From the IMG/VR virus record IMGVR_UViG_3300028558_000791, positions 186,001 through 250,000 of that record: DNA of 64,000 nt, one strand, 5' to 3'. This document shows, in pieces, positions 26,533 through 61,253 of the stretch. The stretch's first letter is position 1. Each line of letters starts with the position of its first letter. Below the pieces are notes generated by a model. It saw only the letters and a list, made by a program, of their open reading frames with translations, made no database searches and was not told the origin of the DNA. Both the position numbers and the translations under genes were made by a program.

Positions 26533-27690
26533 ATGCAGCTACACAATCGTTTATCCAATTTGTTTCAAAAAGAAACTGACAGACTACTCAAGGGTTTCCT
26601 CAACGATAATCCCGATGTACTTAAGAAGTATGTTGAAGGTGGTGTTGTTGCCGTAGGCGCCGTTCTCAGACCAATCAATTCCTTTATGAGACACCTATTA
26701 GTGGTTCAAGGATTGGACCCGGAGGCCGTTCCTGGCGAGAAGCAAAGGCTTCTTGTCCTACAGTCTCTAACCAATTTCTTCGATTCAAAGCATGAAAAAG
26801 ACTTTGATGATGATTACGATCTATCTTGGGTTAATCAAAAGTTTGAAAAGACCAGAGGCGCTCTCAAAGACCTAAAGATGACTAAAGATAAGTTTATGGA
26901 ACTTACTGACCTATCTAGACTTCCAAATGTAAGAACATCTACCGTTCCTACTGTGGAAAGATTAGAAGATCTAACTGGTGAGCCAATTGATCATCTTGCT
27001 CAAAGAGTAAATCCAGTTGCTCCTGAACCAGAGAAGCGTGAGGCTCGTCTTACCTTTTCTGAACGAGCTGAAAAGTTGAAGAGAATTGCTCAAGATATTA
27101 GATCAGAATCTAAAGATTTCAATCCAGGTGATGCTATTCAGCAATTGAGAAGCTTTATGAATGACCTCGGCAAGCAGCTTGAAGATGTCAAGCCAGAGGT
27201 TGAAGAAAAGTCAGCTCCTCTAAAGCCAGGCAAGAAGAAGCTAAACAAAGGTAAGAGAGTCGGTTCAGGACTTAGAGTTCAGCGTGTTTCTAATACAGAA
27301 CCGGTGAAGGAAGTGCCAAGCACCCTAACTGTTGAGTCTGATCGTAAAGTACGCCCACCAGCAATACGTGAACCAGGCCGTAATCTAAGAGACTTGGCTT
27401 CTCAAAAGAAGGCAGAAATCAAGGCTGCTAAAGAAGCTACCCCTGAATTTAAGGCAGAGGCTGCTCGCAAATTAGCTAGAGCTACCGAGCTAACTCATCT
27501 TATGGCTCAAAAGGGTTTAGTTGAAGCTAGCGATACTGCTTTTAACACCCAGGTTGATTCTATGAAGAATTGGTCTGATAACAATTTTGATGCATTGGAA
27601 AGAGTAGTAACTAAGTACGGCCCTACTAAGGATGCCGTTGCAGAGAACAAATTCAAGGGTTCTTTCAGAAGAGCCAAGAATAAGGTATAA
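26533..27690 (+). CDS. Hypothetical protein carrying a copy of the scaffold C-terminal domain
   Basis: 385 aa; 27469-27624 aligns ungapped (20/52 identical) with 59998-60153 of the protease-scaffold ORF. Confidence 0.8.
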   Translation: MQLHNRLSNLFQKETDRLLKGFLNDNPDVLKKYVEGGVVAVGAVLRPINSFMRHLLVVQGLDPEAVPGEKQRLLVLQSLTNFFDSKHEKDFDDDYDLSWVNQKFEKTRGALKDLKMTKDKFMELTDLSRLPNVRTSTVPTVERLEDLTGEPIDHLAQRVNPVAPEPEKREARLTFSERAEKLKRIAQDIRSESKDFNPGDAIQQLRSFMNDLGKQLEDVKPEVEEKSAPLKPGKKKLNKGKRVGSGLRVQRVSNTEPVKEVPSTLTVESDRKVRPPAIREPGRNLRDLASQKKAEIKAAKEATPEFKAEAARKLARATELTHLMAQKGLVEASDTAFNTQVDSMKNWSDNNFDALERVVTKYGPTKDAVAENKFKGSFRRAKNKV

Positions 27691-35769: not shown

Positions 35770-36450
35770 ATGAGAGTTTATTATCTTTACAAGATCACTA
35801 ATACGTTTAACGGTAAGATTTACATAGGACAAAGTGTGAACCCACGTTCACGTTGGTACGGACATAAAAAAGAAGCGGAACGTGAAGTTCCACGAATGGT
35901 AATAGCCAGAGCTATCAAAAAATATGGTAGCTCTGGTTTTCTATTTGAGTTAATAGCTTGCTGCTCTAATCAAGAAGATACCAATGAAATAGAGACGGAA
36001 CTCGTACGACAATATGATAGTAGAAATTCTGAAAAAGGATATAATATTGCACTCGGTGGTATGAACGCCCCCAAAACCGAAGAGTGGAAACGTAAGGTTT
36101 CAGAAAAACTAATGGGTCATGAAGTGACACAGCAAACTCGTGACAAAGTTTCTAAAGGTAATACCGGCAAAGTGCGCTCTGAAGAGTTCAAAAAAGACGT
36201 AGGAGATTTTTGGCGAGGTAAAGAGCGTTCGGAAGAGCATCGAGATAATTTATCAGAGGCTCTTAAGGGCAATCAGAATTGGTTGGGCAAGAAACATTCA
36301 GACGAATCTAAGCAAAAAATGTCACAAGCAAATAAGGGCCGAAGACCTGCCGAGATAACAATTCAAAAGTCTCTTGAGAAAACCAAAGGTAAGACCTGGA
36401 AAGTTATAGATGGCAAGAGAGTATGGGTGGATAATGGACAAAGAGACTGA
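35770..36450 (+). CDS. GIY-YIG homing endonuclease with NUMOD3 repeats (free-standing)
   Basis: YLYKITNTFNGKIYIGQS, RWYGH, YNIALGG; repeated H/R-S-EE..+K+S motifs (HSDESKQKMS). Confidence 0.92.
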   Translation: MRVYYLYKITNTFNGKIYIGQSVNPRSRWYGHKKEAEREVPRMVIARAIKKYGSSGFLFELIACCSNQEDTNEIETELVRQYDSRNSEKGYNIALGGMNAPKTEEWKRKVSEKLMGHEVTQQTRDKVSKGNTGKVRSEEFKKDVGDFWRGKERSEEHRDNLSEALKGNQNWLGKKHSDESKQKMSQANKGRRPAEITIQKSLEKTKGKTWKVIDGKRVWVDNGQRD

Positions 36451-36640
36451 TGAACAGTATGCGGAAAGAATTGGTTCGCTTCGTAAAATCTATAAAGTAA
36501 TGGATTTTCTTGAAATCCCATACGACTTTGAGTATGATGGTGATGAGGGTATGAATGTAAGAGATTTATACGATATCCTTATGGATGATGAAAAACTACG
36601 AGTTTTAGTCTCTAAACTTAGGAATAAAGCCTTTTGGTAA
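36434..36640 (+). CDS. Small hypothetical protein
   Basis: 68 aa from ATG 36434, overlapping the upstream stop. Confidence 0.6.
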   Translation: MDKETDEQYAERIGSLRKIYKVMDFLEIPYDFEYDGDEGMNVRDLYDILMDDEKLRVLVSKLRNKAFW

Positions 36641-36756
36641 CAAAAGCGTGGTAATAATCTGAAATCTACCTAGTAGGTTTACCACCAATAAAGTGCAGAA
36701 TTAGTATCAATATTACTCTATTTAATGTAGGTATGTTCTGTTTAACGGGAGACACG

Positions 36757-37218
36757 ATGCCAAAATTTTCGATAGATTACTCAGGCTTGACCAAACTAAC
36801 AAAGAAAGCATATCGTCTTGCTGATGTAAAAGATCAGTTGGAAACTGTGGCTTTTGATGTGGTTAGGTTCAAGGATAGCGACAAGGGTGCAGACCTTTGG
36901 CAGATCCAAAGCGCAGATGATGGTGATTACATCGTTGCTCTATATGATAACGAGGAAGTCGAAAAGACCGCTTCTTCCAACCCTTGGGGTGTGTTCGTGA
37001 CCAAGAATGGTTGCGACTTGCAAATATCTTACAAGGGTGACCCCCTTGTAAGATTAGCCTCAGCTAAGCTTGGTATTCCAAGTTCAGAGCTGCACAAGGC
37101 TGAGCAGTACCTACCAGAAAAACTAGCCGCTAACAAAAAGCTCGTCAAGGCTTTGTTGAGCGAGCTAAGCGAAGCAGCTAGACAAGAGGTATCAAGACGA
37201 TACCCAGAACTGGTTTAA
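36757..37218 (+). CDS. Hypothetical protein, first gene of the head module
   Basis: SD GGAG before ATG 36757; EKTAS motif. Confidence 0.75.
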   Translation: MPKFSIDYSGLTKLTKKAYRLADVKDQLETVAFDVVRFKDSDKGADLWQIQSADDGDYIVALYDNEEVEKTASSNPWGVFVTKNGCDLQISYKGDPLVRLASAKLGIPSSELHKAEQYLPEKLAANKKLVKALLSELSEAARQEVSRRYPELV

Positions 37219-37233
37219 CGGAATAGGTATTCA

Positions 37234-38832
37234 ATGAGCTTTGATAAAATACATCAACTAGTCGGTTCCTTAGCAAAAGCAGTGGACGAAAATCAAAGGA
37301 TTCCAACTCCAATTTTAGCTGCTAAGCTAGCACGTTATGTTGAAGTCTATCCTCAAGATAAAACTCTTGGATCTATGTCCAGAATTATCGACAAGATGGT
37401 CGACAACAATACAAACTTCATTCGTAAAGCCGAGCTAAAGTCGCTTTACGGAAAACTGTATCAACATGGCACTAAGGTTGCTGAGTTGCTATCAGAGGAG
37501 CTTGGCGAGACTGCCGAGCCAGAAATTACTACTTATCAGCGCGATGAAGCTGTTCAAGCCAATCCATATCACGTAGGTGATCAGGTTTTAGCTAGTGCTT
37601 TAGAGAGCGTATTCGATAAGCACCTACCACTCAAGATGTACTCACAACCAGTAGCCGAAAAAGCTATGAGATCAGTGGGTACAACTTTGGATGCTTGGAA
37701 TCTCAGACCATCTCACTTGACCGTAAGTGATGGTAACGATAAGTTCATCGTAATCAAAGCTGACTACGAAACTCCAAAGGGTGTTACTAGCTTTTACGTT
37801 CCAGTAGAAGTTACTAAGAATAATGTAGTCGAACCAGACGTATTCATGGGAAATACTGGTCCAGAAGACCTCAACCACACTACTATCAAGGCATATCTAA
37901 AGCAACAGGCCGGCACCAAGACTAAGATTGGCGCTGCTGATATCCTAACTGCTTTGACTCATGCCGCTAGTGATAAGCGTGAAGTATCTGCCGCTGAACT
38001 AGCTGTTACCCGTTTGAACGCAGAACGTCAAGGTAAGTCAGAGTTTTTCCAGGGACAAGTAGTTGGACTTAAGGTAGATGCCGCTGCTAAGGCAGATGTT
38101 GCTCTTCCAAAGTCTGATGAGTTTGTTTCTTTCGAAGATAAATTCACTACTCCACAAGGCTTGGCCTCTTGGAGATTTGGTGCAGATAAAGTTGGTACTG
38201 CTAAGGCTCACATCTCTCGTGAACTACAATCCATGGGATTTGCTACCCACCAAATAGTTGTTACTGGTAATGACGAAAACACTATTTTCTGTGGAGTCTC
38301 CTTAGACACTGGAAAAGTTGCTTTCACGGTTCCAGTCAAAGTTGCCAATGATAAACTTCAGAAACCATCTATCATGTTGTGTAATGGCTCTATCTCTAGT
38401 TTTGATAGAAAAGGTATCAACGGTTTAGTTTCTGGAAATAAGACAGATGTTAAGGTTGCCGCAGTTGCTTCTAATATGTCTTCTCTCAAGCCAAGCGAGA
38501 TTGTCAGCAATCTACGTCAAGCTCTTGCTGAAGATAATTATGCCAAGGCAGAAGATGCTCTCAACGTACTAGCAAACGCTGGTGATGAAAAGGCTTATGC
38601 CCTTGCATTCCAGCTATACATGACCGGACTAGCTGGTGTCAAAACGGCTGAGACAAAGTGCTCTAAGATGATTAAGAGTGCTAACAGCGAATACCCAATC
38701 TGTTCACACACCGGATTGCCAACCAATAAGGTTTACCAAGACAAGAGTGGATATTGCCGTCCTCTATATCGTAAGGGTATGGATGAGACTTACGAAGGTG
38801 CATCCTTTATCAACGCTAAAATATTCGGGTGA
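37234..38832 (+). CDS. Hypothetical protein, 532 aa, probably structural
   Basis: Long ORF in the head module; C-terminal Cys cluster KCSK, ICSH, YCRP. Confidence 0.8.
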   Translation: MSFDKIHQLVGSLAKAVDENQRIPTPILAAKLARYVEVYPQDKTLGSMSRIIDKMVDNNTNFIRKAELKSLYGKLYQHGTKVAELLSEELGETAEPEITTYQRDEAVQANPYHVGDQVLASALESVFDKHLPLKMYSQPVAEKAMRSVGTTLDAWNLRPSHLTVSDGNDKFIVIKADYETPKGVTSFYVPVEVTKNNVVEPDVFMGNTGPEDLNHTTIKAYLKQQAGTKTKIGAADILTALTHAASDKREVSAAELAVTRLNAERQGKSEFFQGQVVGLKVDAAAKADVALPKSDEFVSFEDKFTTPQGLASWRFGADKVGTAKAHISRELQSMGFATHQIVVTGNDENTIFCGVSLDTGKVAFTVPVKVANDKLQKPSIMLCNGSISSFDRKGINGLVSGNKTDVKVAAVASNMSSLKPSEIVSNLRQALAEDNYAKAEDALNVLANAGDEKAYALAFQLYMTGLAGVKTAETKCSKMIKSANSEYPICSHTGLPTNKVYQDKSGYCRPLYRKGMDETYEGASFINAKIFG

Positions 38833-38835
38833 ACC

Positions 38836-39663
38836 ATGAGAATAGCTAGGTTGGCAGACCTCTTAGCACACAAGTACGAGATGGTGTCTGAGGCCGCCCC
38901 CTCTGCTCAAGTGGTTAACGAAGTCAAAAGAGAACTCATCAATGCTTATAAGCTGTATGTCAATGGACAATCAGCTAAAGAGCCTATTCTACAAATGCTA
39001 GCTGATGCTGGCGAAACGTTCTCTAAAACATTAGTATCTATGTTCGAGGGCTTAATCGCTAGTATCGATAGTCATAGTAATTCCCAATTGTTCTTTAAGT
39101 TGAACAATATGTTGGGAATGATTAATGATATGAAGAATGACAAAGACTTCCCCGTTAGGTCATTCATTCATGATTCCGTCAGAGTCACCAAAGATTCTGA
39201 GAGAAATTATCGCGAACGTCTCAAGTCTAAGTTTGAGATGATCGTCTCTAGACTCTCCTCAATTTTAGAGAGAGAGGCTAAAAAATTACAAACCACATTG
39301 CCTCTAGGAACCCCTACTGGACTAGAAGGCGGCCGAGTTGAGCCACAAAGAAAAGAACTAAGCAAGGAAAAATTGCTTATGTTCATGAGGACTCCTGCGG
39401 CCCAATATTATGGGCTAGACAATATTGATATAATGACTAAAGCCCTTTCCTATAATGATGTGAAAGAAAAGATTACTACTCTTGTCAATGCTATTGATAG
39501 GGGTCATTTGCCGGCTGATGGGCCTGAAGTTATGGCTGAAACCCGTATGATTAAGAGCCGGTTGGATAGTAAACAGACTAATCTTCCGGCATTAGAGCAA
39601 ACACCTGAGAAACCGGCTCCTCCTGTTTCTCTCTTCGAGCAAGAGGAAGAAGATCCCAAATAA
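38836..39663 (+). CDS. Hypothetical helical protein
   Basis: 275 aa; starts MRIARLADLL. Confidence 0.75.
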   Translation: MRIARLADLLAHKYEMVSEAAPSAQVVNEVKRELINAYKLYVNGQSAKEPILQMLADAGETFSKTLVSMFEGLIASIDSHSNSQLFFKLNNMLGMINDMKNDKDFPVRSFIHDSVRVTKDSERNYRERLKSKFEMIVSRLSSILEREAKKLQTTLPLGTPTGLEGGRVEPQRKELSKEKLLMFMRTPAAQYYGLDNIDIMTKALSYNDVKEKITTLVNAIDRGHLPADGPEVMAETRMIKSRLDSKQTNLPALEQTPEKPAPPVSLFEQEEEDPK

Positions 39664-39674
39664 GAGGCTAAACT

Positions 39675-40388
39675 ATGAGAATCGCTGAACTATTAAATGC
39701 TATGGCTTCTTGGCTATCAAGCCCTAACAATGAAGCTATGTTGCTTGCTGAGTCCGATGAGAAGTGCATGCAAGTAGTGGCAGAGTCTTGTGTTCTAGCC
39801 GCTGAGCTACTCAAGAAAGCCGCTGTTGAAGTGGATACCCTTGAAGCTCCAACTGAGTCTGTTATCACTTCAGACTCCATCGAAGAGACTGCTGCTTTGG
39901 CAAACGCTTTCGATCAGTCTGGTGATCCTCAACTTAAGAGAATCGCATCCGTTCTAGACGAACTTCTTCTAACTATTGCTGCTCCACCAAACGCATACGC
40001 TGAGCGTAAGGATTTGGTTGATGCACGAGCTGATGCTCTGAAGAAGAAGTATGAGCAACCACGTGAAGACCTACACAAGTATAACCAAATTGGAAAGTCT
40101 GAGAAGGCTATTGAACAGAGTGGTTTTACTAAAGAATACAAGATTCTAGAGGCCCCACTAAGCTCACGTTACTGTCCAGATCATCCCGGCGCACAAATTG
40201 CCCGTGTTGGTGAACACATGTGGCAGTGCGATTTAGATAAGAAGACTTACAATTTTGAAACTGGATTTGAACTTGCTAATGGTTCAAAGGTGCCAGGTGG
40301 AGATGTCTCACAACAGACCAATGGTTTGGATACACCATTCCACGCCATCTTTGATACTCGTGAGGGCAGGCTCGGCTACAACAAGTGA
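39675..40388 (+). CDS. Hypothetical protein with CPDH...C motif
   Basis: 237 aa; starts MRIAELL; LANAFDQSG helical motif; RYCPDHPG...WQC. Confidence 0.75.
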   Translation: MRIAELLNAMASWLSSPNNEAMLLAESDEKCMQVVAESCVLAAELLKKAAVEVDTLEAPTESVITSDSIEETAALANAFDQSGDPQLKRIASVLDELLLTIAAPPNAYAERKDLVDARADALKKKYEQPREDLHKYNQIGKSEKAIEQSGFTKEYKILEAPLSSRYCPDHPGAQIARVGEHMWQCDLDKKTYNFETGFELANGSKVPGGDVSQQTNGLDTPFHAIFDTREGRLGYNK

Positions 40389-40402
40389 TTGATTGGTATA
40401 CA

Positions 40403-40552
40403 ATGGATCGGCATTTAGAAGAGTTTCAAGAGGCTATAGTAGAGGTTTTGTCACAGTTAGACTCGGGAATGGCTGAGCTTTTCTTAGACCGTTTCACGGA
40501 GATAATGAATGAACAAAAATGCACTCAAGAAAATTCTGGAACACCCAGATAA
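40403..40552 (+). CDS. Unlisted 49-aa ORF duplicating a C-terminal helix of the next protein
   Basis: HLEEFQEAIVEVLSQLDSGMAELFLDRFTEIM vs HISVFHDVIRDVLSQLDLESSMLFMELFQEKM (14/32 identical); no clear SD. Confidence 0.5.
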   Translation: MDRHLEEFQEAIVEVLSQLDSGMAELFLDRFTEIMNEQKCTQENSGTPR

Positions 40553-41267
40553 AGATGAAATCATTGCTAAGTTAGTATTAGACTATCCTGCCAAAGATAT
40601 TCATGATTGGCTTGCTGGCAAATATACCAATGTCAGCGAAGCTAAATTCGTAGTGGCTGAAAAGTCAATTAAAGTATTCAAAGAGAACTATCTTGATGTC
40701 TATAGCATGATCCGTGAGGACATGATTAAAACCAAGCAGGCCGTAGCTACCAGTACGGAAGATCAGCTAGAGTTAGCTGTCAAGAGTAATCCAACTTACA
40801 AGAGTAAAATGTTGGAATTGGCTGGTAAAGAAATAGATGTCCGTTCTATGGTGGCACAATTGTGTTTAGCTATTGAAACGCGTTTAGGTCAGGTTTTTGA
40901 TGAAATTCAAGAAGACCCGCGTAATATCAATACTAAGATAGATCGTGTTCTAATCGAATATGGTGAGCTACTAGGCGGCTTATTGGAAAAGTATTACAAA
41001 TTTACTGAGAATCCGGCCGATTTGGTTGTCCAGCATAACGTGACTTTGCAGGTCGTGGATCAGCATATTTCGGTATTTCATGATGTAATCCGAGATGTTC
41101 TGTCTCAGTTAGATTTGGAAAGCTCCATGCTATTTATGGAATTATTTCAAGAGAAGATGGCTAGACTAAAGCCACCAGCTCTAGAGCAACCACTCAACAC
41201 TGACATGAAGCTTGCTGAGGCTAAACTACTCAACGAAACCATTAACAAAAAGTTGAATAACTCATAA
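40509..41267 (+). CDS. Hypothetical helical protein; possible terminase small subunit-like
   Basis: N-terminal HPDKDEIIAKL..Y...DI..W HTH-like segment, central helices, VQHNVT strand; the TerS idea is weak. Confidence 0.55.
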   Translation: MNKNALKKILEHPDKDEIIAKLVLDYPAKDIHDWLAGKYTNVSEAKFVVAEKSIKVFKENYLDVYSMIREDMIKTKQAVATSTEDQLELAVKSNPTYKSKMLELAGKEIDVRSMVAQLCLAIETRLGQVFDEIQEDPRNINTKIDRVLIEYGELLGGLLEKYYKFTENPADLVVQHNVTLQVVDQHISVFHDVIRDVLSQLDLESSMLFMELFQEKMARLKPPALEQPLNTDMKLAEAKLLNETINKKLNNS

Positions 41268-43189
41268 TGCCAGAGAACAAGCCTTCCAACAAACCTATTA
41301 TCGACATGCCTTCCAAGAAGCAGTTGGAGAAGGCTACTAAACCATATTCTGATGAGGAGTTAAAACTAACTCCTGAACAAGAAGAAAAGATGAAGAAGCT
41401 CATGGAGTTTTTTGATCATCATGGTGTGGATTATGGTAAGTTTATTCCTAAATTCTATTCTTACATTACTGAGAAGAAGGCTTATCCAAATTACGATCAG
41501 TATCAGCATATTGCTGGACAGCATGATATGAAGAGATGGATGCTTGCCCTAAAAGACATCCACTACAAACAGAAGGCCGGGTTCCAATATCGAGAGGCTA
41601 TCAAGACTGCGACTCAGGGTTGGGCTAAAATGGAAATCTACGATTTCTTGAACTGGGTAAAGTTTCACGAAGAAGGGGCTCACATGAAATACAAGTTTGC
41701 ACAAGTCTGGTATGAAAATGGACAGCCAGGCTATTTCTTGCACATTAAGCCAGACGCCCAGAAAGAACCTGAACCTCACTCCGATGCTAATGCTATCAAT
41801 GATGCTCGTGAAGAGTCTGAGCGTAAAGAAGAGAAAAGACAAACCATCGAGAAGCAACGTTCCAAAATTATTGGACGTTTAGATTCCGCTGAGAAGTTAC
41901 TTCGTTCCCAAGAAGGTCAAGAGTTTGCTGGTGGCGAACTAGAAAATTTGATGGAGGCTATCTATAGTCTCAAGAAGAAAGTTCAGCTTGTTAACAAGTT
42001 GAGTGTTTCTACACGCCTATACGAAGATATGATTGTTCGTGAAGGTAACGTACTAAAACGTAATGGATTCGTTAAAGCTGCCGAGGTACTATACTCGTTA
42101 GCTCAAACCCCAGGTCAAGCAGGTCAAGACGCTAAGGGTACGACTGGCCCTGGTGCAGTTCCTCCAGTCGCTCCGCCCGCCGACCCATCAGGGGCCGGCA
42201 ATCCTGGTGCTCCAGGTGGATTGCCAACACAACCACCAGGAACGCCAAGCGTTCAAACCCCAGTCGGCGGAGATCAAAATGATCCACCACAACCAAAGGG
42301 CATCAAAGATTTCATCGACAATATGAACGATGGAAATAAGACCGATGGTGATGTAACTGGTGCAGAAGATGATGAACTAGAAGTGATTGACTCAGAAGAT
42401 CAGTTGATGGTTACTGAAGCACAAATTGTACCACCACCTACTCCAGGCATTCCACCAGCAGCTTTGGAAGACGTTCCTACTACAGATGCCCCAAAGCCAG
42501 AGAGAAACCCTCCAGCATTCATTCCAGATGCAGAGGAGAAAGAACCTGGTAAACCAGGCGATCCCGGTTCTCCAGCAACCGAAGAACCACTAGAAGTTAC
42601 AGAAGATGACATTAAGCCAGGTGGTGATAAACCTGAGCCTGCTGCATCTAATTTTGACTCTAAGGTCGATGAAGTATTCAAGAGCCTCACCATCGGTGAT
42701 GTTGTAGCTAAGCTAGAAGATATCTCTAAGTCTTACAAGACTAGAGAAATGCCAAGACAATTAGGCATCGTTGATATGATGTTAGATAGCCTTGGATTGG
42801 CCTCCCTATTCCCTTCACTCTCTGAAGCTCAGAACAAAGCACTAGAGGCTAACAACTATATCTCTACTCGTGTAGACGATATTCTTGCTAAGCTACGTGG
42901 TGCAATGGCAAGTGCCGAAAAGTCTCCAGTTGCACCAGCTCCTGAGAGAGAAGATATGGCTGGCATCAGAGGCAAGCTACAAGGTGACCAAGATAAAGAG
43001 AAGCAGCGCAAGCAACAGCGTAAAGAGCAAGAAGCTGCCGAACTCGATGGTACAGGTAAAGAAGAGGGTAAGGAAACTCCAGCAGTAGAGTTGGGTGAAT
43101 TAGGTGCTCCTACCGCTCCAGCAACTCCAGGACCAGCCGCTCCTCCAACTCCACCTCCACCAGTAGTTCCAAGACCACCAGCCGTTTAA
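41267..43189 (+). CDS. Hypothetical Pro-rich protein, 640 aa, probably head-associated
   Basis: Folded blocks separated by Pro/Gly/acidic linkers; KFAQ, SLAQ, TEAQ, DDELEVID. Confidence 0.8.
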   Translation: MPENKPSNKPIIDMPSKKQLEKATKPYSDEELKLTPEQEEKMKKLMEFFDHHGVDYGKFIPKFYSYITEKKAYPNYDQYQHIAGQHDMKRWMLALKDIHYKQKAGFQYREAIKTATQGWAKMEIYDFLNWVKFHEEGAHMKYKFAQVWYENGQPGYFLHIKPDAQKEPEPHSDANAINDAREESERKEEKRQTIEKQRSKIIGRLDSAEKLLRSQEGQEFAGGELENLMEAIYSLKKKVQLVNKLSVSTRLYEDMIVREGNVLKRNGFVKAAEVLYSLAQTPGQAGQDAKGTTGPGAVPPVAPPADPSGAGNPGAPGGLPTQPPGTPSVQTPVGGDQNDPPQPKGIKDFIDNMNDGNKTDGDVTGAEDDELEVIDSEDQLMVTEAQIVPPPTPGIPPAALEDVPTTDAPKPERNPPAFIPDAEEKEPGKPGDPGSPATEEPLEVTEDDIKPGGDKPEPAASNFDSKVDEVFKSLTIGDVVAKLEDISKSYKTREMPRQLGIVDMMLDSLGLASLFPSLSEAQNKALEANNYISTRVDDILAKLRGAMASAEKSPVAPAPEREDMAGIRGKLQGDQDKEKQRKQQRKEQEAAELDGTGKEEGKETPAVELGELGAPTAPATPGPAAPPTPPPPVVPRPPAV

Positions 43190-43197
43190 GGAGATAA

Positions 43198-43971
43198 ATG
43201 AAACTCCGCGAACTGCTTCAAGAAATGAAGAGAGTACAAGAAAAGATAGGCTCATCACCAGCCTATATTTGCGGAGGTACGCCCAGAGATAAGTACATGG
43301 GACAATTACAGAACATTGCTGACATAGATGTTACAACCGGTGATAAGACGGTTGATTACCTATCTCAAGAATTTTTCATTGAGTTTCGTAAGAAATACAA
43401 CGTTACTCGTAAGACAATGGAAGATGGCCACAGCACTATCTTTATCGGCAGTCTAAAAGTAGACTTCTCATCCAACTTTATGGTTCCTAACGTGGATCAA
43501 GAGTTAGCTAAGATAGGAATTAAAAATCCTTCTAACATACAGAGAGAAATGTTTAGTCGTGACTTTACGTGTAACTCTTTATTACTGACAACGGACCTTA
43601 AGCAGATTCTCGATCCAACTAAAAGAGGATTCAAAGATATCAAGGAAAAGAAAATCAGGACTTGTTTAGCTCCAGAGATTACTCTAACTTCTAATAGGAA
43701 TAGAGTTGTAAGGGCTATTTATCTAGCTTGCAAATTAGATTTCGACATAGATGATTCAATTATTGCGTATGTAAAGAAGTATCCACAAACTGTTAAGATT
43801 TCAACTGAAAAAGCCATGAATGATAAGTTGAATGAAGCTTTCTCTAGGAATCCAGAGAAGGCGGCGGAGTTAATTTCCAAGATGAATTTGTGGACTCAGA
43901 TTCCAATTACGGAAAAAGTTTATCCGTACTACATGAAACATATCAAAGGAAAAGCTAATGTCAGTAAATAA
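43198..43971 (+). CDS. CCA-adding enzyme/poly(A) polymerase family nucleotidyltransferase (class II), short form
   Basis: AYICGGTPRD, DIDVTT, RDFTCNS, DPTKRG..DI, RVVRAI..ACKLDF. Confidence 0.88.
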   Translation: MKLRELLQEMKRVQEKIGSSPAYICGGTPRDKYMGQLQNIADIDVTTGDKTVDYLSQEFFIEFRKKYNVTRKTMEDGHSTIFIGSLKVDFSSNFMVPNVDQELAKIGIKNPSNIQREMFSRDFTCNSLLLTTDLKQILDPTKRGFKDIKEKKIRTCLAPEITLTSNRNRVVRAIYLACKLDFDIDDSIIAYVKKYPQTVKISTEKAMNDKLNEAFSRNPEKAAELISKMNLWTQIPITEKVYPYYMKHIKGKANVSK

Positions 43972-45025
43972 GAAGGGATATTTTCAAGGTGGTGGCGGAG
44001 TCAACGAACCAACGCCCGGCGAAAAGAAATACAAGTCGGATCCGGCTTTGGTTGTTCAGCCGCGCTTTGAAGAACCATTTTATCGCAACTACGATTTGTA
44101 TACAATTCCTGGTATGGAGCACATCGGCCCAGGCACCGGGTACCATGGCCTACAAAATTACGATAGCGTCCAGGAATTTCTAGAAGCAAGACGCAAGAGG
44201 ATGAAGGACCGCTACGTAGCGGATGATTCCTGGCAATTAGATTCTGGCAAACGAACTAAAGAAAATCCGGGCATCAAAGCTCGTGCCGCTATTTTTGAAA
44301 GAATTATCAAGACTGCTGGACCTAATTACGATTTAGGTAAAGGGCTCTACCAAGAGATGAGTGATGGTAAGGTTGATAGTGTAGAGGAATTTAGAGAAGA
44401 AGGCAACCATGGTCCCGGCGCTCTAATGATGGCAGATGATAATGCTGACTATATGTTACCACCTAAAGAACATGGTACCAGTATCTATAATTGGAAGAAC
44501 AGTCCTTATCAAGGAACTCCTGGTGCCAAAAACAAGAAAAAGAAGAAGGATGTCAATCATATTGATTTCCCAATTGATGATGAGATTAACCATGATGGCG
44601 AGATTTATCCAAGTGAAGAATCTTACCACAAGCCAGGATTAGTCGGACCTAGTGGTATAGATAACGTTGCCACCTTCCCAGGTGAAACGGGAGCAACTGA
44701 CTTCTCATCCTACATGAATTCAACTGATATTGCTGGTGAACACTCTTATCTACCAGAGCACGACTTAATGGATAGGGGTGACGATGCCCTCAATTTTGGT
44801 CAGGATTTGGAAGATGAACAGGGCCCAGCCAGAGGGCTTCAAGATGATGACCTTCAAAAACTTTTTAATAAGTACCTAACTCCCGATGAGACCGGTTTAT
44901 TTGGACTACCAGACGGTGTAGACCCAGAGGGCCACGATGCTGACCAGACTCAACAGGTAGAAGAGCCTTTCACCGGAACTTCCGACATAGGTACTCAAAT
45001 GTATGAGGATAAGTGGAATATCTAA
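43958..45025 (+). CDS. Acidic low-complexity hypothetical protein beginning with the scaffold-repeat motif
   Basis: N-terminal KKGYFQGGGGVNEPTPGEKKY matches the repeats in 56566..60294. Confidence 0.8.
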   Translation: MSVNKKGYFQGGGGVNEPTPGEKKYKSDPALVVQPRFEEPFYRNYDLYTIPGMEHIGPGTGYHGLQNYDSVQEFLEARRKRMKDRYVADDSWQLDSGKRTKENPGIKARAAIFERIIKTAGPNYDLGKGLYQEMSDGKVDSVEEFREEGNHGPGALMMADDNADYMLPPKEHGTSIYNWKNSPYQGTPGAKNKKKKKDVNHIDFPIDDEINHDGEIYPSEESYHKPGLVGPSGIDNVATFPGETGATDFSSYMNSTDIAGEHSYLPEHDLMDRGDDALNFGQDLEDEQGPARGLQDDDLQKLFNKYLTPDETGLFGLPDGVDPEGHDADQTQQVEEPFTGTSDIGTQMYEDKWNI

Positions 45026-47411: not shown

Positions 47412-49295
47412 ATGCCAAGTCTACATATTGAAAATAAAGAAATGTTCGAGAAGATGAAGAAGCAACTTGCAATGCTTGACCCTGTAACTTTTTGCGAGTC
47501 CAATTTAACATTGGAAGGAGAGCCATTCAAACTAAGTGGTAATGGATATAAGCCGTTCTCAGATATCTATAGATACATCGGAATCAAAGCATTAGAGCCA
47601 GATGCAAAACCAGTTATCTTAGTTAAGGGACGTCAGGTAGGAGCCACTACGATGGCCAGCGCCCTAGAAATGTACTTCATGGGTTCTGGATTATTTGGTG
47701 ATGGATTCCGTCCACCAATCCGTATCATTCATGCATTCCCTCAATTGGAATTAGCTGCCGCTTATTCAAAGACCAAGCTTCAGCAAATGATTAGTCAGGC
47801 TAAGATTCCCGAAGGAACTCCAGAAAACAAGGCTTCCCGCCCAAAGTCTTTCATGCAGCAATTGCTTGATCAGTCATCTCCAACTAATGACTCTTTGCAC
47901 TTCAAACAGTTTATTGGCGGAAACCATTTGTGGGTTGAGTCAACTGGTATTGATGCCGACAGAATCATGGGTCGTACCGCTGACATTCTATTCTTTGACG
48001 AAGTCCAGAAGACTACCAGCCAAGCCATCGGAAACGCGCTCAAGATTCTAACCAACGCTAAGTATGGTAGACCAACTAAGGGCGTACAAGTTTTCTTTGG
48101 AACGCCTCGTCGTAAGGGATCTGATTACCACAAGATGTGGCAGTCATCTTCTCAACAGTATTACTATTTAGGATGTGAGAGCTGTAAAGAACATTTCCCA
48201 CTATATACTCCAGGATCTGATGATTGGGAGAAAGTTTGGATTCACGGTAAAGTTGTTAAGTGCTCTAAGTGCGGACATGAACAAGATAAGCTACAAGCAC
48301 AGGAACGTGGTAAATGGGTAGCCTTTAAGAATCCAAATGACCCAGACTGTGATATGATTGGCTTTCATATTAATCAGCTTTACATGCCTAAATTCACACG
48401 AGAAGATATCGATAAGGAAAAGCCGGGCCGTCATCCAATCAATACGGAACGTGTTTTTCAAAACGAAGTTCTTGGAGAGTTTTACCAGGGCGATGCAAGT
48501 CCATTGTCTCCAGATGAAGTTCGCACCATGTGCGCTGACTTCGAGAGAAAGTTTAGCCCACGTATTCTTCCATCAAAAGGTATTAACCAATATTTTACTG
48601 TACTTGGAATCGATTATGGCGCTCGTTCCGACTTGGAGCAATTGGCCGATCCAGAAAGAGTTAAGCCGGCAGGACAGTCATACAGCACGGCTGTTGTTCT
48701 ACAAACTAAGGGCGCTCAATTGTTATCAATCGAGTTTGCTACCAAGTTCAAGCGTAATGACGTTGAAAGTAAAAAAGGAATCATTGATCAACTGATGAGA
48801 CAATATAGTATTCAGTTGGCGGTCGGAGACATTGGTTACTCCAATGACTTCTCTTCTATGTTGCATAACACGTATGGAGATAGGTATTTAGTTTCTCGTG
48901 CCCATAATAAGATTAATGACCATGTCAAATTCAATCATGAAGCATTTCCAAAAGAAATCATTTTTGAAAGAGACTTCTACATTACTGAACTTTATGATCA
49001 GATGAAGAAGGGGATGATTAGATTTCCATTTGGAGATTATGAAAAGATAGCCTGGTTGATTGAACACAGTTGCAGTATGGAACTAAAGCCATCTATTTCT
49101 AAATATGGAGATCATACAGTTCATTATGTGAAAGGTGGAACTCCAAACGACGGGTTTATGGCATTGTTGAATGCCTATTTAGCCTTTAAGTTCTTGGTAA
49201 GTAGAGGATTTACAAATAATAATCCGGCTAATCATACAGCCAAAAACCTAACCAAACCCATGGTAATGTCTGGTTATGTGCCCAGGAAGTTCTAA
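47412..49295 (+). CDS. terL: Terminase large subunit
   Basis: VILVKGRQVGATT, LFFDEVQ, FGTP, zinc module CESC...CSKC, GFHINQL, NEVLGE, nuclease LGIDYG, DIGY, DGFMA. Confidence 0.92.
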   Translation: MPSLHIENKEMFEKMKKQLAMLDPVTFCESNLTLEGEPFKLSGNGYKPFSDIYRYIGIKALEPDAKPVILVKGRQVGATTMASALEMYFMGSGLFGDGFRPPIRIIHAFPQLELAAAYSKTKLQQMISQAKIPEGTPENKASRPKSFMQQLLDQSSPTNDSLHFKQFIGGNHLWVESTGIDADRIMGRTADILFFDEVQKTTSQAIGNALKILTNAKYGRPTKGVQVFFGTPRRKGSDYHKMWQSSSQQYYYLGCESCKEHFPLYTPGSDDWEKVWIHGKVVKCSKCGHEQDKLQAQERGKWVAFKNPNDPDCDMIGFHINQLYMPKFTREDIDKEKPGRHPINTERVFQNEVLGEFYQGDASPLSPDEVRTMCADFERKFSPRILPSKGINQYFTVLGIDYGARSDLEQLADPERVKPAGQSYSTAVVLQTKGAQLLSIEFATKFKRNDVESKKGIIDQLMRQYSIQLAVGDIGYSNDFSSMLHNTYGDRYLVSRAHNKINDHVKFNHEAFPKEIIFERDFYITELYDQMKKGMIRFPFGDYEKIAWLIEHSCSMELKPSISKYGDHTVHYVKGGTPNDGFMALLNAYLAFKFLVSRGFTNNNPANHTAKNLTKPMVMSGYVPRKF

Positions 49296-56565: not shown

Positions 56566-59500
56566 ATGCCCATTATTAAACTAGGCGAAGCCCACGAAAT
56601 TAAACTGGAGAACATGGAGTCATGTCTTCCTGAAGTGAGTGCTGAGGTCTTAGATAACTTTAGGAAGTTTGCAACCAATCTAAAGAAGATTGCTCCTAAA
56701 GCTGAAGACTTCCTCTATTTCTCTGCTGTTATGATGCATGCTGCTGAAGCATCTGCGCTTAACGAAGATGGTACACCAAAGCTAACCCTCAAAGGCGAAC
56801 CAGTCCAAGTAGGATGGGATACTAGTGGTGGTACATGGAAATGGGCATCTAATGACCCTAACATTAAGCCATATAAGAATTCTAATGGAGACATATTTCC
56901 AGAAGCAGAATTAACCAAAGCTTACAAGAAGTGGAAGCACAAGCCTCTATGCGTGGATCATAAATCGAGTTCGGTTGACCATGTTAGAGGTTTTATCGTT
57001 GATACTTATTACGACCGCTCACTCAAGAGAGTGATTGCATTGTGCGCCTTAGATAAGGCCGGATTCCCTCAATTAGCTAGACAAATTTCAACAGGCGTTT
57101 CTAACTGTGTATCCATGGGTACAGCAGTAGGAAGAGCCATCTGTTATGACTGCGGTAGAGTCGCTCGTGCTGAGCAAGACTTCTGCGCTCATATGAAGAA
57201 CAAGACTTGCTACGGTGAAATCAACGTAGACCTCAATCCAATTGAGTTATCTATCGTTGTAAATGGTGCAGACCCTAGAGCCAACATCAAACACATCATC
57301 GCCGCAGCAAACACAATGAACACTTACCTAGAGAATCGCGCTAAGGAACTAGAAAAAATAGCCGACCTCAAGTTTAGTGCTCAATTCAGTGTGTCAGATC
57401 TTAATGGTGACGAAGGTGGAGGAAGTGCTCAATTTAATGTTGATGCTACTGACATTAACCAGTTCAAGAGCGAATTAGACGAAGCATTCCGCAAAGTCCA
57501 AGAGTTCAAGAATGTAAAAATTTCTGAAAAAGATACTAATTCTACAGCATCTAATCAGACGTCGGGTTCGATCGCCATGGATGAAGGTGCACCCACGGAT
57601 TCTGGATTGGCTCTCCAAACTCCGCAAGCCATTAGGCTTGCATCCGCTGATGTAGAGGCGGAATCATTGGCTGAGCTTCAGCAAGTAACTGCATCAATTG
57701 AAGCTACGTTAGGTCAAATGAAGAAGAGCTTGGATAAGTTAGCAAAAACTTCTACTACTAAAAAACAAGAGGAAAACATGTCTGGATCAAAAGAAATCAA
57801 TAAGCAAGCTTATTTCCAGGGTGGCGGTGGCGTTAATGAACCAACTCCAGGCCAAGTTAAATATCCAAAGGACGGTCTTAACGAGCAACTTCGTGAACAC
57901 GAAGATAAGCACATGACCGGTCAACCACCTTTCCCTGAGGTTGGTCCAGTGGATGGAATGCATCCTTCTCCAGCTTCGGCTGATCCTTCTGACGAGCTTG
58001 CTCGTAAGAAGATGCTCGCTAGAGCAGAAGCAGAAGAGCGTGCCCTCAAGCGTAACGCCATTGTCAATATGGCCAAGGACGCATTGAAGAGCAAGGAAGC
58101 TTACTACCTCGGTGGTGGCGGTGTAAACGAGCCAACTCCAGGTAAAGTAAAGTATCCAAAAGACAAGCTCAACGAAGAGCTACGTGACTACGAAGATAAG
58201 CACATGGTTGGACAGCCTCCATTCCCAGGTGTTGGTCCAGTCGACGGCATGCACCCTTCTCCATCATCTGCTGATCCAAAGGATGAATTGAAGCGTAAGC
58301 AAATGCTCGCTCGTGCACAACTACGTGCCAGATTTGTCAAGGCCGCTAACAGTAACGGCACTCAGAACAGAGCCAGAAGCGCTTGGGAAGTATTCCTTGG
58401 TGACAAGCTATTGTTGACCGCATCTGTTGACGAACTCTCCGGTGGAAACACTGACGTTCTATATGACTCAATTGCTACTAAGGACTTCGGAGCCAAGTTG
58501 ATCGAAAAGGTCAAAGTTCAAGGCGCTGATGCAGTAAGCAAGCTAATTAAGAAAGCCCAAGGCGCTCCAGGCGCACCACCAGCCGGCCCTCCAGCAGGTG
58601 ATCCATCCAGTGCTCCACCTCCAGGCGGTGACATGGGTGCAGGCGCTCCAGATGCTGGTCCTCCAGCAGAAGACGCAGGCAAGTCTGGTGACCCAAAGCA
58701 AAGCGCAGTAGAACTCGCTGAGAAGGTAAGAGACCTAAGCTCTGACCTAGTAGAAGCAGTTCGTGCCCTAACCGGTGAACAAGCCGAAATGGGTGGCGCA
58801 GGCCCAGCACCAGATGCAGGTGGAGTTGGTGGCCCAGCCGGTGGTCCAATGGCCGCTGATGACCAGGATGCAAAGAAGAAGAAAGACTCTATGGAGTCCT
58901 CTGCTAACTTTAGCACCTCAACTCTCAACACCTTGAGAAAAGAATTGAATGGCGCACTTACTCATGCAATGAAGGAAGCTATTGCAGAGCTAACCGAACA
59001 CCAGCAAGAATTAGACATGATTGCCGGTATGTACGACAAGGGTGCTGTAACTCAATCTAACCAAGACTTTGTTGGAACTATCGTAGAAGACGCATTGAGC
59101 GAAGCTAAGACTGCTGTTGCAGACGGCTTTAAGCTAATGACCGCCTTCGTCAAGTATGCTCGTGGTACCAAGGCAATTGTCAAGCGTGCTGAGATTGAAT
59201 CAGAACTTGAATCACTAGCCGATGGAGACACTATGAGCGACAAGAAGGACAGTCACTCCGCAGACGGCGGTGACTTGATGGGACTAATTAATGACACCAA
59301 TGCAGACTTGGACGCAGTTCAAGAGATGATGGGTGACGACCAGGATCACGATCTTGGCGGTGAACTTGATGGCGATGGCCTAGCTGGACTCTTTGAAGAG
59401 GGTGGCGAAGGTGAAGAACATGGTCACGAGGAACCACTATTCGAAGGTTTGGCTGACGACAACGATCTCACTTTTGAACAAGGTGAGAAAGTACCACCAG

Positions 59501-60294
59501 AGTTGGCCGGAAAGAAGTTAACTATGGCATCATTTGATGATAGAGCAGGCCGTGCAGCTCTCAGGGCCAAGTTGGCTGCTGACGCTCTCGGAAAAGAAGA
59601 CGACGGAGAAGTTCAGGATATGTCCAAGCAAAAGTGGAGCGATATGCTAGATGCTGCTGACAAGCACTCTGACGGTCAAACCGAATTGGACGTCAAGCCA
59701 TCCGACAGCCTCGGATTGGTTGAGACCCTACCAGAAGTAAACAAGGCCATGATGGACGTTGCTAAAGCTCCACCAAAGGTTCGTAAGGAAGCAGAAGTAA
59801 TTCAGAGATTAGTTTCTGAAGGCAAGCTTGATCCAAATGATGTTGATGCACTCGCATCTTACGGATTGGATAAAGAAGCCGTTGCTTACTGGAAGAAGTA
59901 CTTCGGTGAAGTTGATGGTGGCAGTGAATTCGCCAGTGAGATGGTGAAGGAACATGTCAAGGCAGCTATGGAAGAAGAACTAAACACCTTCAGAGTCAAG
60001 CTAGCCCGTGCTTACGAACTAACTTACGATATGGTTGACCGTGGCCTATGCCGTCACGACAGAGTCACCATCTCTGATCAAGTTGACCAGATTATGAGAT
60101 TTAACGATGATGCATTCGAATCCTTGAAGAAGGTCGTTGCCCGTCATGAACCAGGTAATCTACGCAAGTCTGCTGGCGCAATGCCACAGGTTGGTCTCAG
60201 AGTTGACGGAGAATTCTCTCCAGCTCAAGCAGTCGAGGATGACTCTTATACCCAATTGTCAAGCCTCTTTGGTAACAAAAAGGGTGTGTTCTAA
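56566..60294 (+). CDS. Prohead protease-scaffold polyprotein, 1242 aa
   Basis: N-terminal NSNGDIFPEAEL..AY..W..KPLCVDH...VRGFIVD...VSMG...CYDCG...CAH...PIELSIVVNGADPRA resembles herpes-fold phage maturation proteases with a zinc insert; long repeat, acidic and helical C-terminal part; lies after portal. Confidence 0.75.
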   Translation: MPIIKLGEAHEIKLENMESCLPEVSAEVLDNFRKFATNLKKIAPKAEDFLYFSAVMMHAAEASALNEDGTPKLTLKGEPVQVGWDTSGGTWKWASNDPNIKPYKNSNGDIFPEAELTKAYKKWKHKPLCVDHKSSSVDHVRGFIVDTYYDRSLKRVIALCALDKAGFPQLARQISTGVSNCVSMGTAVGRAICYDCGRVARAEQDFCAHMKNKTCYGEINVDLNPIELSIVVNGADPRANIKHIIAAANTMNTYLENRAKELEKIADLKFSAQFSVSDLNGDEGGGSAQFNVDATDINQFKSELDEAFRKVQEFKNVKISEKDTNSTASNQTSGSIAMDEGAPTDSGLALQTPQAIRLASADVEAESLAELQQVTASIEATLGQMKKSLDKLAKTSTTKKQEENMSGSKEINKQAYFQGGGGVNEPTPGQVKYPKDGLNEQLREHEDKHMTGQPPFPEVGPVDGMHPSPASADPSDELARKKMLARAEAEERALKRNAIVNMAKDALKSKEAYYLGGGGVNEPTPGKVKYPKDKLNEELRDYEDKHMVGQPPFPGVGPVDGMHPSPSSADPKDELKRKQMLARAQLRARFVKAANSNGTQNRARSAWEVFLGDKLLLTASVDELSGGNTDVLYDSIATKDFGAKLIEKVKVQGADAVSKLIKKAQGAPGAPPAGPPAGDPSSAPPPGGDMGAGAPDAGPPAEDAGKSGDPKQSAVELAEKVRDLSSDLVEAVRALTGEQAEMGGAGPAPDAGGVGGPAGGPMAADDQDAKKKKDSMESSANFSTSTLNTLRKELNGALTHAMKEAIAELTEHQQELDMIAGMYDKGAVTQSNQDFVGTIVEDALSEAKTAVADGFKLMTAFVKYARGTKAIVKRAEIESELESLADGDTMSDKKDSHSADGGDLMGLINDTNADLDAVQEMMGDDQDHDLGGELDGDGLAGLFEEGGEGEEHGHEEPLFEGLADDNDLTFEQGEKVPPELAGKKLTMASFDDRAGRAALRAKLAADALGKEDDGEVQDMSKQKWSDMLDAADKHSDGQTELDVKPSDSLGLVETLPEVNKAMMDVAKAPPKVRKEAEVIQRLVSEGKLDPNDVDALASYGLDKEAVAYWKKYFGEVDGGSEFASEMVKEHVKAAMEEELNTFRVKLARAYELTYDMVDRGLCRHDRVTISDQVDQIMRFNDDAFESLKKVVARHEPGNLRKSAGAMPQVGLRVDGEFSPAQAVEDDSYTQLSSLFGNKKGVF
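57802..58317 (+). repeat. Two 225-nt (75-aa) direct repeats in the scaffold region
   Basis: 57802-58026 KQAYFQGGGGVNEPTPG...KKMLARA and 58093-58317 KEAYYLGGGGVNEPTPG...KQMLARA; many synonymous differences. Confidence 0.95.
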
Positions 60295-61037: not shown

Positions 61038-61253
61038 ATGTACAAACAAAGCAGTTTTGAGGACGAACTCTATCGTTCGATGGAGAAGACTATAGTCAAA
61101 AATCAAACCGAAGATAAGCACGGTTTCAATAAGCTAGCTCAAGCTGCTGACCTTTTGAATGCGGCGGCCGATATTTTCGACCGTGCTGGTATGCAAGAGG
61201 AGTCGAAAGACGTTACTAATATTCTAGAAGAACTAGCTAAGGATCTCAAATGA
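61038..61253 (+). CDS. Small protein paralogous to the N-terminus of the next gene
   Basis: SFEDELYRSME...AADLLNAAADIFDRAG vs LFEDELVASME...AAECLHAALEIFEEQG; SD AAGGA. Confidence 0.8.
   Translation: MYKQSSFEDELYRSMEKTIVKNQTEDKHGFNKLAQAADLLNAAADIFDRAGMQEESKDVTNILEELAKDLK

What the first reader, a model, noticed from the sequence alone, without database searches (positions are those of the whole stretch)
40403..41159. Unannotated 49-aa ORF that copies the C-terminal helix of the next protein
ORF 40403-40552 encodes HLEEFQEAIVEVLSQLDSGMAELFLDRFTEIM, matching HISVFHDVIRDVLSQLDLESSMLFMELFQEKM (41064-41159) at 14 of 32 positions without gaps. The substitutions are conservative and the codons have diverged, which implies selection on the peptide. 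It overlaps the start of the larger gene. It could be a dominant-negative or stoichiometric partner of an oligomer, which would matter if the large protein is TerS-like.
Basis: partly seen in the sequence, partly recalled or inferred. Interest (0 to 1): 0.6.

Follow-up and report, generated by a model that had tools for sequence, protein, structure and literature searches.

The report
Small gene copying neighbour's helical hairpin
A 55-codon gene in a 480-kb soil phage is an old copy, still under selection, of a two-helix hairpin from the protein encoded right after it. It occurs in dozens of related phages and probably acts as a small mimic of that hairpin, although the function of both proteins is unknown.

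Summary
The ORF at 40385/40403-40552 matches residues 183-221 of the next protein (40509-41267): BLASTP E 5e-7, profile-profile E 5.6e-13. It overlaps that gene's start by 44 nt.

It is not a decaying relic. Sixteen distinct DNA versions and 60 protein clusters from metagenomes are all open. They all sit at the same place and nearly all start on the stop codon of the gene before. Mean pS is 0.72 against pN 0.32. There are 0 stops in 587 codons, against 54 and 42 in the other two frames.

AlphaFold gives a confident two-helix hairpin (pLDDT 87). The hydrophobic face and the turn motif of the parental hairpin are kept. Several polar residues that never vary in the parent are lost.

The gene is accessory: 11 of 62 distinct relatives have it. 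It lies in a variable slot that holds homing endonucleases, promoters, terminators or nothing in other relatives. It changes about ten times faster than its parent.

My best reading is a phage "microprotein" that mimics the parental hairpin. Binding is not shown; the co-fold gave no verdict. The TerS idea has no support. I rate it moderately interesting: a new variant of a known kind.

The parts
39675..40388 (+). Upstream core gene ('up', 237 aa, unknown function). Its TGA stop is overlapped by the GTG start of the small gene.
   Evidence: ORF list and sequence. Conserved at 47-95% identity in the related loci. No Pfam or PHROG match.
40385..40552 (+). Small gene, 55 aa from GTG 40385 (49 aa if from ATG 40403). 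It is a paralog of the hairpin of the next protein.
   Evidence: Open in 16 distinct DNA versions, with start-stop overlap in 15 of 16. pS 0.72 against pN 0.32, and 0 stops in 587 codons. 60 protein clusters. AF2 pLDDT 86.8, helices 4-23 and 27-50.
40412..40507 (+). Hairpin-coding core of the small gene, the part aligned with the parent.
   Evidence: Gapless 14/32 residues and 56/96 bases. Per-column conservation.
40498..40501 (+). GGAG, a Shine-Dalgarno-like site 7 nt before the large gene's ATG. It lies inside the small gene's last helix codons.
   Evidence: Read from the sequence. Conserved in the DNA alignments.
40509..40552 (+). 44-nt overlap. The tail of the small gene is the large gene's first 15 codons read one base earlier.
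   Evidence: The same tail is in all 60 clusters.
40509..41267 (+). Large core gene ('big', 252 aa, all-helical, unknown function).
   Evidence: 250 representatives at E <= 0.001. dN/dS of 0.02-0.05 among its closest relatives, up to 0.25 for the most distant pairs.
41055..41171 (+). Parental hairpin, residues 183-221 of the large protein. It is the most conserved stretch of that protein.

Best explanation
SHOWN. 40385-40552 is a real accessory protein-coding gene kept by selection. It arose by an old partial duplication of the codons for a two-helix hairpin (residues about 181-221) of the adjacent core gene 40509-41267. The copy landed directly in front of that gene's start codon. In nearly all versions its start sits on the stop codon of whatever gene lies upstream. 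That fits translation by coupling within the tightly packed run of genes from 37234 to 43189.

INFERRED. The product is a free hairpin of about 6 kDa. It keeps the hydrophobic face and the turn motif of the parental hairpin but has lost several polar residues that never vary in the parent. It therefore most likely works like a 'trans-microprotein': it takes the place that the large protein's own hairpin takes. That place could be on another copy of the large protein, where it would cap or limit self-association, or on the hairpin's partner. Either way it would tune or block the large protein's assembly. Its patchy distribution, fast amino-acid change and position in a recombination-prone slot suggest an optional modulator rather than an obligate subunit.
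For: Homology.

Coding selection. Over 16 distinct DNA versions, mean pairwise difference at codon positions 1/2/3 is 0.37/0.28/0.54. Mean pS is 0.72 against pN 0.32, and pN is below pS in 115 of 120 pairs. The two shifted frames show no such gap. Stops number 0 of 587 codons in frame, against 54 and 42 of 571 out of frame. Two codon-usage subfamilies differ strongly at synonymous sites but keep the same residue pattern. Length differences among the versions compared are multiples of three bases.

Unbiased DNA sample. Every related IMG/VR locus that carries the insert has it open: 10 distinct versions and none broken.

Gene-like layout. The start overlaps the upstream stop as ATGA, GTGA or TAATG in 15 of 16 versions, whichever gene is upstream (gene calls).

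Family size: 60 clusters at 90% identity, 30-65 aa, all with the overlap tail.

Fold: AF2 pLDDT 86.8, helices 4-23 and 27-50. In the parent the segment is helices 171-200 and 203-218.

Kept and lost residues (small residue i aligns with large residue i+176). Kept: I187, F190, I194, V197, L198, S199, Q200, D202, E204, F209, F213, E215, K216. Not kept: H186, H191, D192, L203 (Pro in small), S206 (Ala in small), E211.

Derived features shared by the small family point to one old origin.

An RNA-library assembly holds a gapless 553-nt contig, about 91% identical, spanning the upstream gene's end, the whole small gene and part of the large gene.
Against: Binding is not shown; complex prediction gave no verdict (score 0.10).

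The function of the large protein is unknown, so 'modulation' has no testable content yet.

Among the window's closest subfamily, dN/dS of the small gene is 0.5-1.1. That is weak constraint.

In that subfamily synonymous sites are less diverged than those of the large gene (pS 0.16-0.33 against 0.35-0.72). This could mean recent lateral spread or a constraint on the RNA or DNA rather than the protein.

Most relatives do without the gene.

No coevolution between small and large is visible in the hairpin.

Translation has not been observed. The RNA-library contig could come from contaminating DNA.
Confidence: 0.6

Rival explanations
1. The reading frame matters more than the peptide. The small ORF is kept as a coupling or leader ORF. 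It carries ribosomes from the upstream gene across the roughly 105-nt insert and opens a weak hairpin that pairs with the large gene's SD, so setting the large gene's translation. On this view the peptide is secondary.
For: Start-stop overlaps in 15 of 16 versions. The large gene's GGAG lies inside the small gene. There is a weak consensus hairpin between the turn codons and the SD region, with one compensatory pair, U-A or G-C, between subfamilies. Synonymous sites are unusually conserved in the 3' half in the window's subfamily.
Against: A frame-only constraint does not explain residues away from the SD that are nearly invariant: F33 100%, A30 95%, F37 93%, D26 92%, I18 91%, E20 91%, L22 90%. 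It also does not explain pN well below pS across subfamilies or a confident fold. The RNA structure is weak: consensus -6.5 kcal/mol, single-sequence z -1.6. The small ORF ends 44 nt inside the large gene, which is a poor geometry for termination-reinitiation. Relatives with gaps of 9-20 nt need no such device.
Confidence: 0.2
2. It is a passenger of homing-endonuclease traffic. The fragment was made by faulty repair at a homing hot spot and persists because it is carried along by co-conversion between co-infecting relatives, without benefit to the phage.
For: In relatives the same slot holds endonuclease genes of 243-376 aa (phrog_559/681, DUF723/DUF4379 zinc fingers) and their remnants. Other partial copies of the large gene lie there. 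L031/L074 have a recent mini-copy, 93% aa and 90% DNA identical to their own parent. L048/L055/L058 have a copy of another hairpin, residues about 116-164. The small gene's relationships disagree with those of the large gene. For L001-L081, the large gene has pS 0.72 and the small gene 0.27. For L001-L005 the order is reversed. At least 4 gains or losses are forced on the tree.
Against: Co-conversion explains spread, not long-term openness or pN below pS with saturated pS. No endonuclease gene lies in the slot in the window or in most loci that carry the small gene. The other hairpin copy is rare, whereas this one has 60 clusters.
Confidence: 0.1
3. It is a decaying, untranslated remnant of a duplication.
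For: Absent from most relatives. Window-lineage dN/dS is near 0.7-1. No direct evidence of translation.
Against: No stop or frameshift in any of 16 distinct DNA versions, at divergence where synonymous sites are saturated. Start codons are conserved. The residue pattern is conserved.
Confidence: 0.05
4. The small frame is joined to the large frame by a programmed +1 shift within the 44-nt overlap. That would give a large protein with an extra N-terminal hairpin.
For: The two frames differ by +1. The small frame ends with a Pro codon, a rare Arg codon and a stop. That loosely recalls known +1 sites, which I state from my own knowledge.
Against: That sequence is dictated by the large protein's conserved residues 10-15, so its conservation says nothing. 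No family member of the large protein carries the hairpin fused in frame; N-terminal extensions are at most about 22 residues. The large gene has its own SD and ATG.
Confidence: 0.03

Closest known systems
Eukaryotic trans-microProteins (for example LITTLE ZIPPER and Id-type proteins), as defined in PMC9638782
   Same: Small, single-domain and sequence-related to one domain of a larger protein. Said to arise by duplication followed by domain loss, and to act on the related protein.
   Different: This one is in a phage, is encoded immediately upstream of its parent gene and overlaps it. The parent is not a known transcription factor. Binding and a dominant-negative effect are untested here.
Shortened inhibitor isoforms made from one gene in phages and transposons (lambda S107/S105 holin-antiholin, Tn5 Inh). 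Cited from my own knowledge, not tested here.
   Same: A shorter relative of a protein is made alongside it and modulates its assembly.
   Different: Those share the parent's codons through alternative starts in the same frame. Here the short form is a separate, diverged copy (about 41% identity) in another frame, and it evolves independently.
Partial gene copies left beside mobile endonuclease genes or other mobile DNA. Organelle genomes show such fragments, for example a cox1 fragment ORF (PMC3783487).
   Same: A fragment of a neighbouring gene sits next to a site used by mobile endonuclease genes in relatives.
   Different: Such fragments are usually treated as by-products. This one shows coding selection and a large family.

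Membership tests
microProtein (trans-miP) concept | Small (<20 kDa) protein with a single domain | tested here: met
   55 aa. AF2 gives one two-helix hairpin, pLDDT 86.8.
microProtein (trans-miP) concept | Sequence-related to a domain of a larger protein, arisen by duplication and domain loss | tested here: met
   BLASTP E 5e-7 and hhalign E 5.6e-13 to residues 181-227 of the neighbour. A recent analogous mini-copy in L031 shows the route.
microProtein (trans-miP) concept | Binds the related protein or its partner and alters its activity | tested here: inconclusive
   Complex prediction gave no verdict. An experiment is needed.
Small terminase subunit (TerS), for the large protein | Match to a TerS sequence family | tested here: not met
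   No Pfam or PHROG hit for the window's protein, for 55 relatives or for 10 distant relatives. Only a sub-threshold language-model neighbour.
Small terminase subunit (TerS), for the large protein | Fold: N-terminal DNA-binding domain plus an oligomerisation core resembling solved TerS | tested here: inconclusive
   The AF2 model is weak (pLDDT 64, pTM 0.27). Only generic helical-hairpin matches were found.
Small terminase subunit (TerS), for the large protein | Gene next to the large terminase gene | tested here: not met
   TerL is at 47412-49295, with five genes between.
Pseudogene or decaying duplicate | Stops, frameshifts, or dN about equal to dS | tested here: not met
   0 stops in 587 codons. 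Length differences among the versions compared are in frame. pN 0.32 against pS 0.72.
Translationally coupled gene | Start codon overlapping or abutting the upstream stop | tested here: met
   ATGA, GTGA or TAATG in 15 of 16 versions.
Homing-endonuclease-associated duplication | Endonuclease gene at the same site | tested here: inconclusive
   None in the window's slot. Present in that slot in 11 related IMG/VR loci and in L221, with remnants in 3 more.

The most novel reading that the evidence does not exclude
The small protein is a weapon in competition between related phages. On this reading it is a fast-changing decoy hairpin, carried in a recombination-prone, endonuclease-visited slot. 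It would poison assembly of the essential large protein of co-infecting relatives while the carrier's own protein tolerates it. A broader form of the idea is that huge phages repeatedly turn fragments of core proteins into microproteins; a second fragment-copy ORF lies at 61038-61253 in this window.
Probability: 0.1. Interest if true: 0.8.

Novelty: new variant of a known kind. Interest (0 to 1): 0.5.

Why it matters
Small proteins that copy one interaction module of a larger protein are an established way of regulating protein complexes in plants and animals. They are hardly described in phages. This case is well populated and clearly under selection. Its origin can be traced: a partial duplication in front of the parent gene. 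It also has natural with/without pairs among close relatives, such as L002 against L003. That makes it a tractable system for asking how new microgenes arise and what they do. It also flags the hairpin as the functional hot spot of an uncharacterised core protein shared by a large clade of huge soil, sediment and groundwater phages. Finally, it shows that gene callers miss such genes in some records.

Tried and rejected
1. Co-folding of the large protein (A1) with the small one (A3) scored 0.01 and 0.10 against a mark of 0.32. That is no verdict, and I do not use it as evidence either way.
2. Function of the large protein. Nothing usable came from Pfam, PHROGs, PDB sequence profiles, Foldseek on BFVD and PDB, VIA-align wide, the atlas shape search, or PHROGs on distant relatives. 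VIA-align gave only generic antiparallel helical hairpins for residues 105-170.
3. The phage collection gave no DNA or protein match, so no cultured relative was found there.
With A2 on viral contigs it gave no new small-ORF loci.
5. My degenerate DNA pattern on metagenome contigs returned 120 loci. None encodes the large or the small protein, so all are chance hits and that scan was wasted.
6. Four of nine look-ups by identity returned gene maps but no DNA or a short contig.
I redid it from coordinates.
8. RNA structure as the main explanation: weak.
9. Promoter and terminator scan of 36500-43400: at chance level.
10. The second hairpin-copy ORF (L055 type) has no further relatives by word search.
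11. I looked for coevolution between the small gene and the parental hairpin and for in-frame fusions, and found neither.

Full report
SETTING. The window is bases 186001-250000 of a 480,838-bp IMG/VR virus record. Genes are tightly packed, almost all on the + strand, at 42% G+C. The window carries DNA polymerase, SbcC-like nuclease, UvsX-like recombinase, SSB, primase, a GIY-YIG homing endonuclease, a CCA-adding enzyme, large terminase (47412-49295) and portal. It is therefore a huge tailed phage. Near-identical DNA is found in rhizosphere metagenomes, and related sequence in sediment, groundwater and soil. No cultured relative turned up in the phage collection.

THE OBSERVATION. It holds. 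The ORF 40403-40552 exists, and so does a longer form from GTG 40385. Its product aligns without gaps to residues 183-221 of the 252-aa protein encoded at 40509-41267 (16/39 identical, E 5e-7). At the DNA level it is 56/96, with identities of 23, 21 and 12 of 32 at codon positions 1, 2 and 3. Among 203 small ORFs of the window compared with its 65 large ORFs, only this pair and one other give a hit. Profile against profile the match is E 5.6e-13. The two genes overlap by 44 nt.

RELATIVES. A scan of IMG/VR with the large protein returned 80 loci at 49-97% identity. In all of them the large gene follows the same 237-aa upstream gene, but the distance between the two varies from 9 bases to 2 kb.
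- Most relatives have a short spacer, sometimes with promoter-like or terminator-like sequence.
- Eleven loci have a 243-376-aa endonuclease gene there, with treble-clef zinc-finger repeats (phrog_559/681, DUF723, DUF4379). Three more have its remnant.
- Fourteen loci (ten distinct sequences) have the small ORF.
- On the tree of the large protein the small ORF sits in three separate parts. At least four changes are forced, eight by parsimony.

So it is an accessory gene in a variable slot.

IS IT A GENE? Every DNA copy found is open. I added six more DNA versions by identity look-up, giving 16 in all.
- The frame has 0 stops in 587 codons, against 54 and 42 of 571 in the other two frames.
- Differences pile up at third positions (0.37/0.28/0.54).
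- Mean pS is 0.72 against pN 0.32, with pN below pS in 115 of 120 pairs. The shifted frames show no such contrast.
- Two subfamilies use different codons for the same residue pattern.
- In 15 of 16 versions the start codon (ATG in 10, GTG in 5) overlaps the stop of the preceding gene as ATGA, GTGA or TAATG. This holds even where the preceding gene is a different accessory ORF. The sixteenth has an in-frame TTG or GTG just upstream.
- A search of 5.8 billion proteins with the small-ORF profile found 60 clusters of 30-65 aa. All end with the same tail, which is the large gene's first codons read one base earlier, so all sit in this same position.
- The window's own copy is not in that collection, but 89%-identical copies are called there as 55-aa genes starting at the upstream GTG position. 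In them the window's internal Met is Ile. That favours 40385 as the start.
- An assembly from a soil RNA library contains a gapless 553-nt contig, about 91% identical, running from the upstream gene through the small gene into the large gene. This fits one transcript, but DNA carry-over is not excluded.

WHAT WAS COPIED. AlphaFold models the large protein as all-helical with low overall confidence (pLDDT 64, pTM 0.27). The matched segment is helix 171-200, a turn, and helix 203-218. It is the most conserved stretch of the protein. The small protein, folded with its 61-row alignment, is a confident hairpin (pLDDT 86.8, helices 4-23 and 27-50).

Column by column (small residue i aligns with large residue i+176), the small family keeps the hydrophobic positions and the turn motif: I187, F190, I194, V197, L198, S199, Q200, D202, E204, F209, F213, E215 and K216 of the parent. 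It has not kept H186, H191, D192 or E211, which are almost invariant in the parent. It has fixed Pro for L203 and Ala for S206. These shared derived states point to one old duplication rather than many. Some members still carry three to nine further residues that match the parent beyond position 217.

TEMPO AND MODE. The large gene is under strong constraint: dN/dS is 0.02-0.05 among its closest relatives and up to 0.25 in the most distant pairs. The small gene changes about ten times faster. At 97% identity of the large protein (window against L002), the small cores are 56% identical. Within the window's subfamily dN/dS is 0.5-1.1. In that subfamily its synonymous sites are less diverged than those of the large gene (pS 0.16-0.33 against 0.35-0.72). 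Between subfamilies the reverse holds. The small gene's relationships therefore only partly follow those of the large gene (Spearman 0.53). This points to exchange of the cassette among related phages. An added constraint on the RNA around the large gene's GGAG site is also possible, because a weak hairpin with one compensatory pair can be drawn there.

ORIGIN. The slot produces such copies repeatedly. L031 and L074 carry a recent mini-copy: the large gene's first 8 codons joined to codons 176-222. It is 93% identical in protein and 90% in DNA to their own large gene, and it has its own stop. L048, L055 and L058 carry, beside an endonuclease gene, a 47-54-aa ORF derived from the preceding hairpin, residues about 116-164 (E about 1e-9 to their own large protein). 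That one is rare. A tandem duplication followed by internal deletion, perhaps provoked by endonuclease-induced breaks, is thus a plausible route. This is inference.

MECHANISM. Shown: a selected, probably coupled, small gene encoding a hairpin paralogous to the conserved hairpin of its neighbour. Inferred: it acts as a mimic of that hairpin, in the manner of trans-microProteins. These are defined as small single-domain relatives, made by duplication and domain loss, that act on the related protein (PMC9638782). Keeping the packing face and turn while losing parent-specific polar residues fits a molecule that can occupy the hairpin's place without doing the rest of its job. I could not test binding; the single co-fold job gave no verdict. 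The main rival is a coupling or leader ORF whose peptide is secondary. It explains the layout and the conserved 3' half. It does not explain the invariant residues away from the SD, the pN/pS contrast between subfamilies, or the confident fold.

THE LARGE PROTEIN. Its function stays open. It belongs to a large family (250 representatives at 50% identity with E <= 0.001) with no annotated member in any library I could search. The TerS suggestion rests only on a language-model neighbour below the tool's own threshold and on a generic helical architecture. The gene is not adjacent to the terminase gene.

VERDICT. The partner or dominant-negative idea is plausible but untested. The TerS link is unsupported. 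The finding is a new variant of a known kind, a phage microprotein made from a piece of its neighbour. Interest is moderate, because neither protein has a known role.

Noticed in passing
window 61038-61253 and 61250-62170: A second fragment-copy ORF. A 71-aa ORF directly upstream of a 306-aa gene, with an ATGA overlap, matches residues 3-64 of that gene (23/65 identical, E 2e-9).
   Followed up: partly
L018, L020-L023, L041, L048, L055, L056, L058, L078, L221 (slot between the 237-aa and 252-aa genes); remnants in L013, L014, L024: The intergenic slot is a hot spot for a free-standing endonuclease gene with repeated treble-clef zinc fingers (phrog_559/681, DUF723/DUF4379).
   Followed up: partly
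L031:3977-4144 (also L074); L048:3861-4004; L055:3980-4144: Other partial copies of the large gene lie in the same slot. One is a recent mini-copy (codons 1-8 plus 176-222, 90% DNA identity to its parent). The other is an older ORF derived from the hairpin at residues about 116-164.
   Followed up: partly
L005:3766-4017, L062:404-763, L218:697-1188, L221:1046-1504: A further accessory ORF family (83-163 aa, no Pfam or PHROG match for the two members scanned, L005 and L062) also occupies the slot, upstream of the small gene where both occur.
   Followed up: partly
window 43958-45025, 26533-27690 and 56566-60294: The N-terminus of the 355-aa protein (residues 3-63) resembles two repeats (411-466, 509-563) in the 1242-aa protein, whose N-part is protease-like. 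Residues 313-364 of the 385-aa protein resemble its residues 1145-1196. These may be shared targeting or processing segments of head proteins.
   Followed up: no
window 40462-40501: A weak hairpin pairs the turn codons of the small gene with the region of the large gene's GGAG. One pair changes on both sides between subfamilies (U-A or G-C).
   Followed up: partly
window 43198-43971: A CCA-adding enzyme (PolyA_pol head domain, tRNA nucleotidyltransferase PHROGs), although ARAGORN finds no tRNA gene in the 64-kb window.
   Followed up: no
window 35770-36450: A GIY-YIG-type homing endonuclease gene (phrog_314 and others) between the primase gene and the block of unknown genes.
   Followed up: no
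window 40302-40840: A soil metatranscriptome assembly (run X20) holds contigs of a relative, about 84-91% identical, across the whole 39675-41267 stretch. Their word depth of 23-76 (27-46 in most bins) is higher than in the DNA runs laid beside it.
   Followed up: partly
P0172, P0186, P0203: Short proteins of 71-99 aa that match inner or C-terminal parts of the large protein at high identity. They may be contig-end fragments, split genes or further mini-copies.
   Followed up: no
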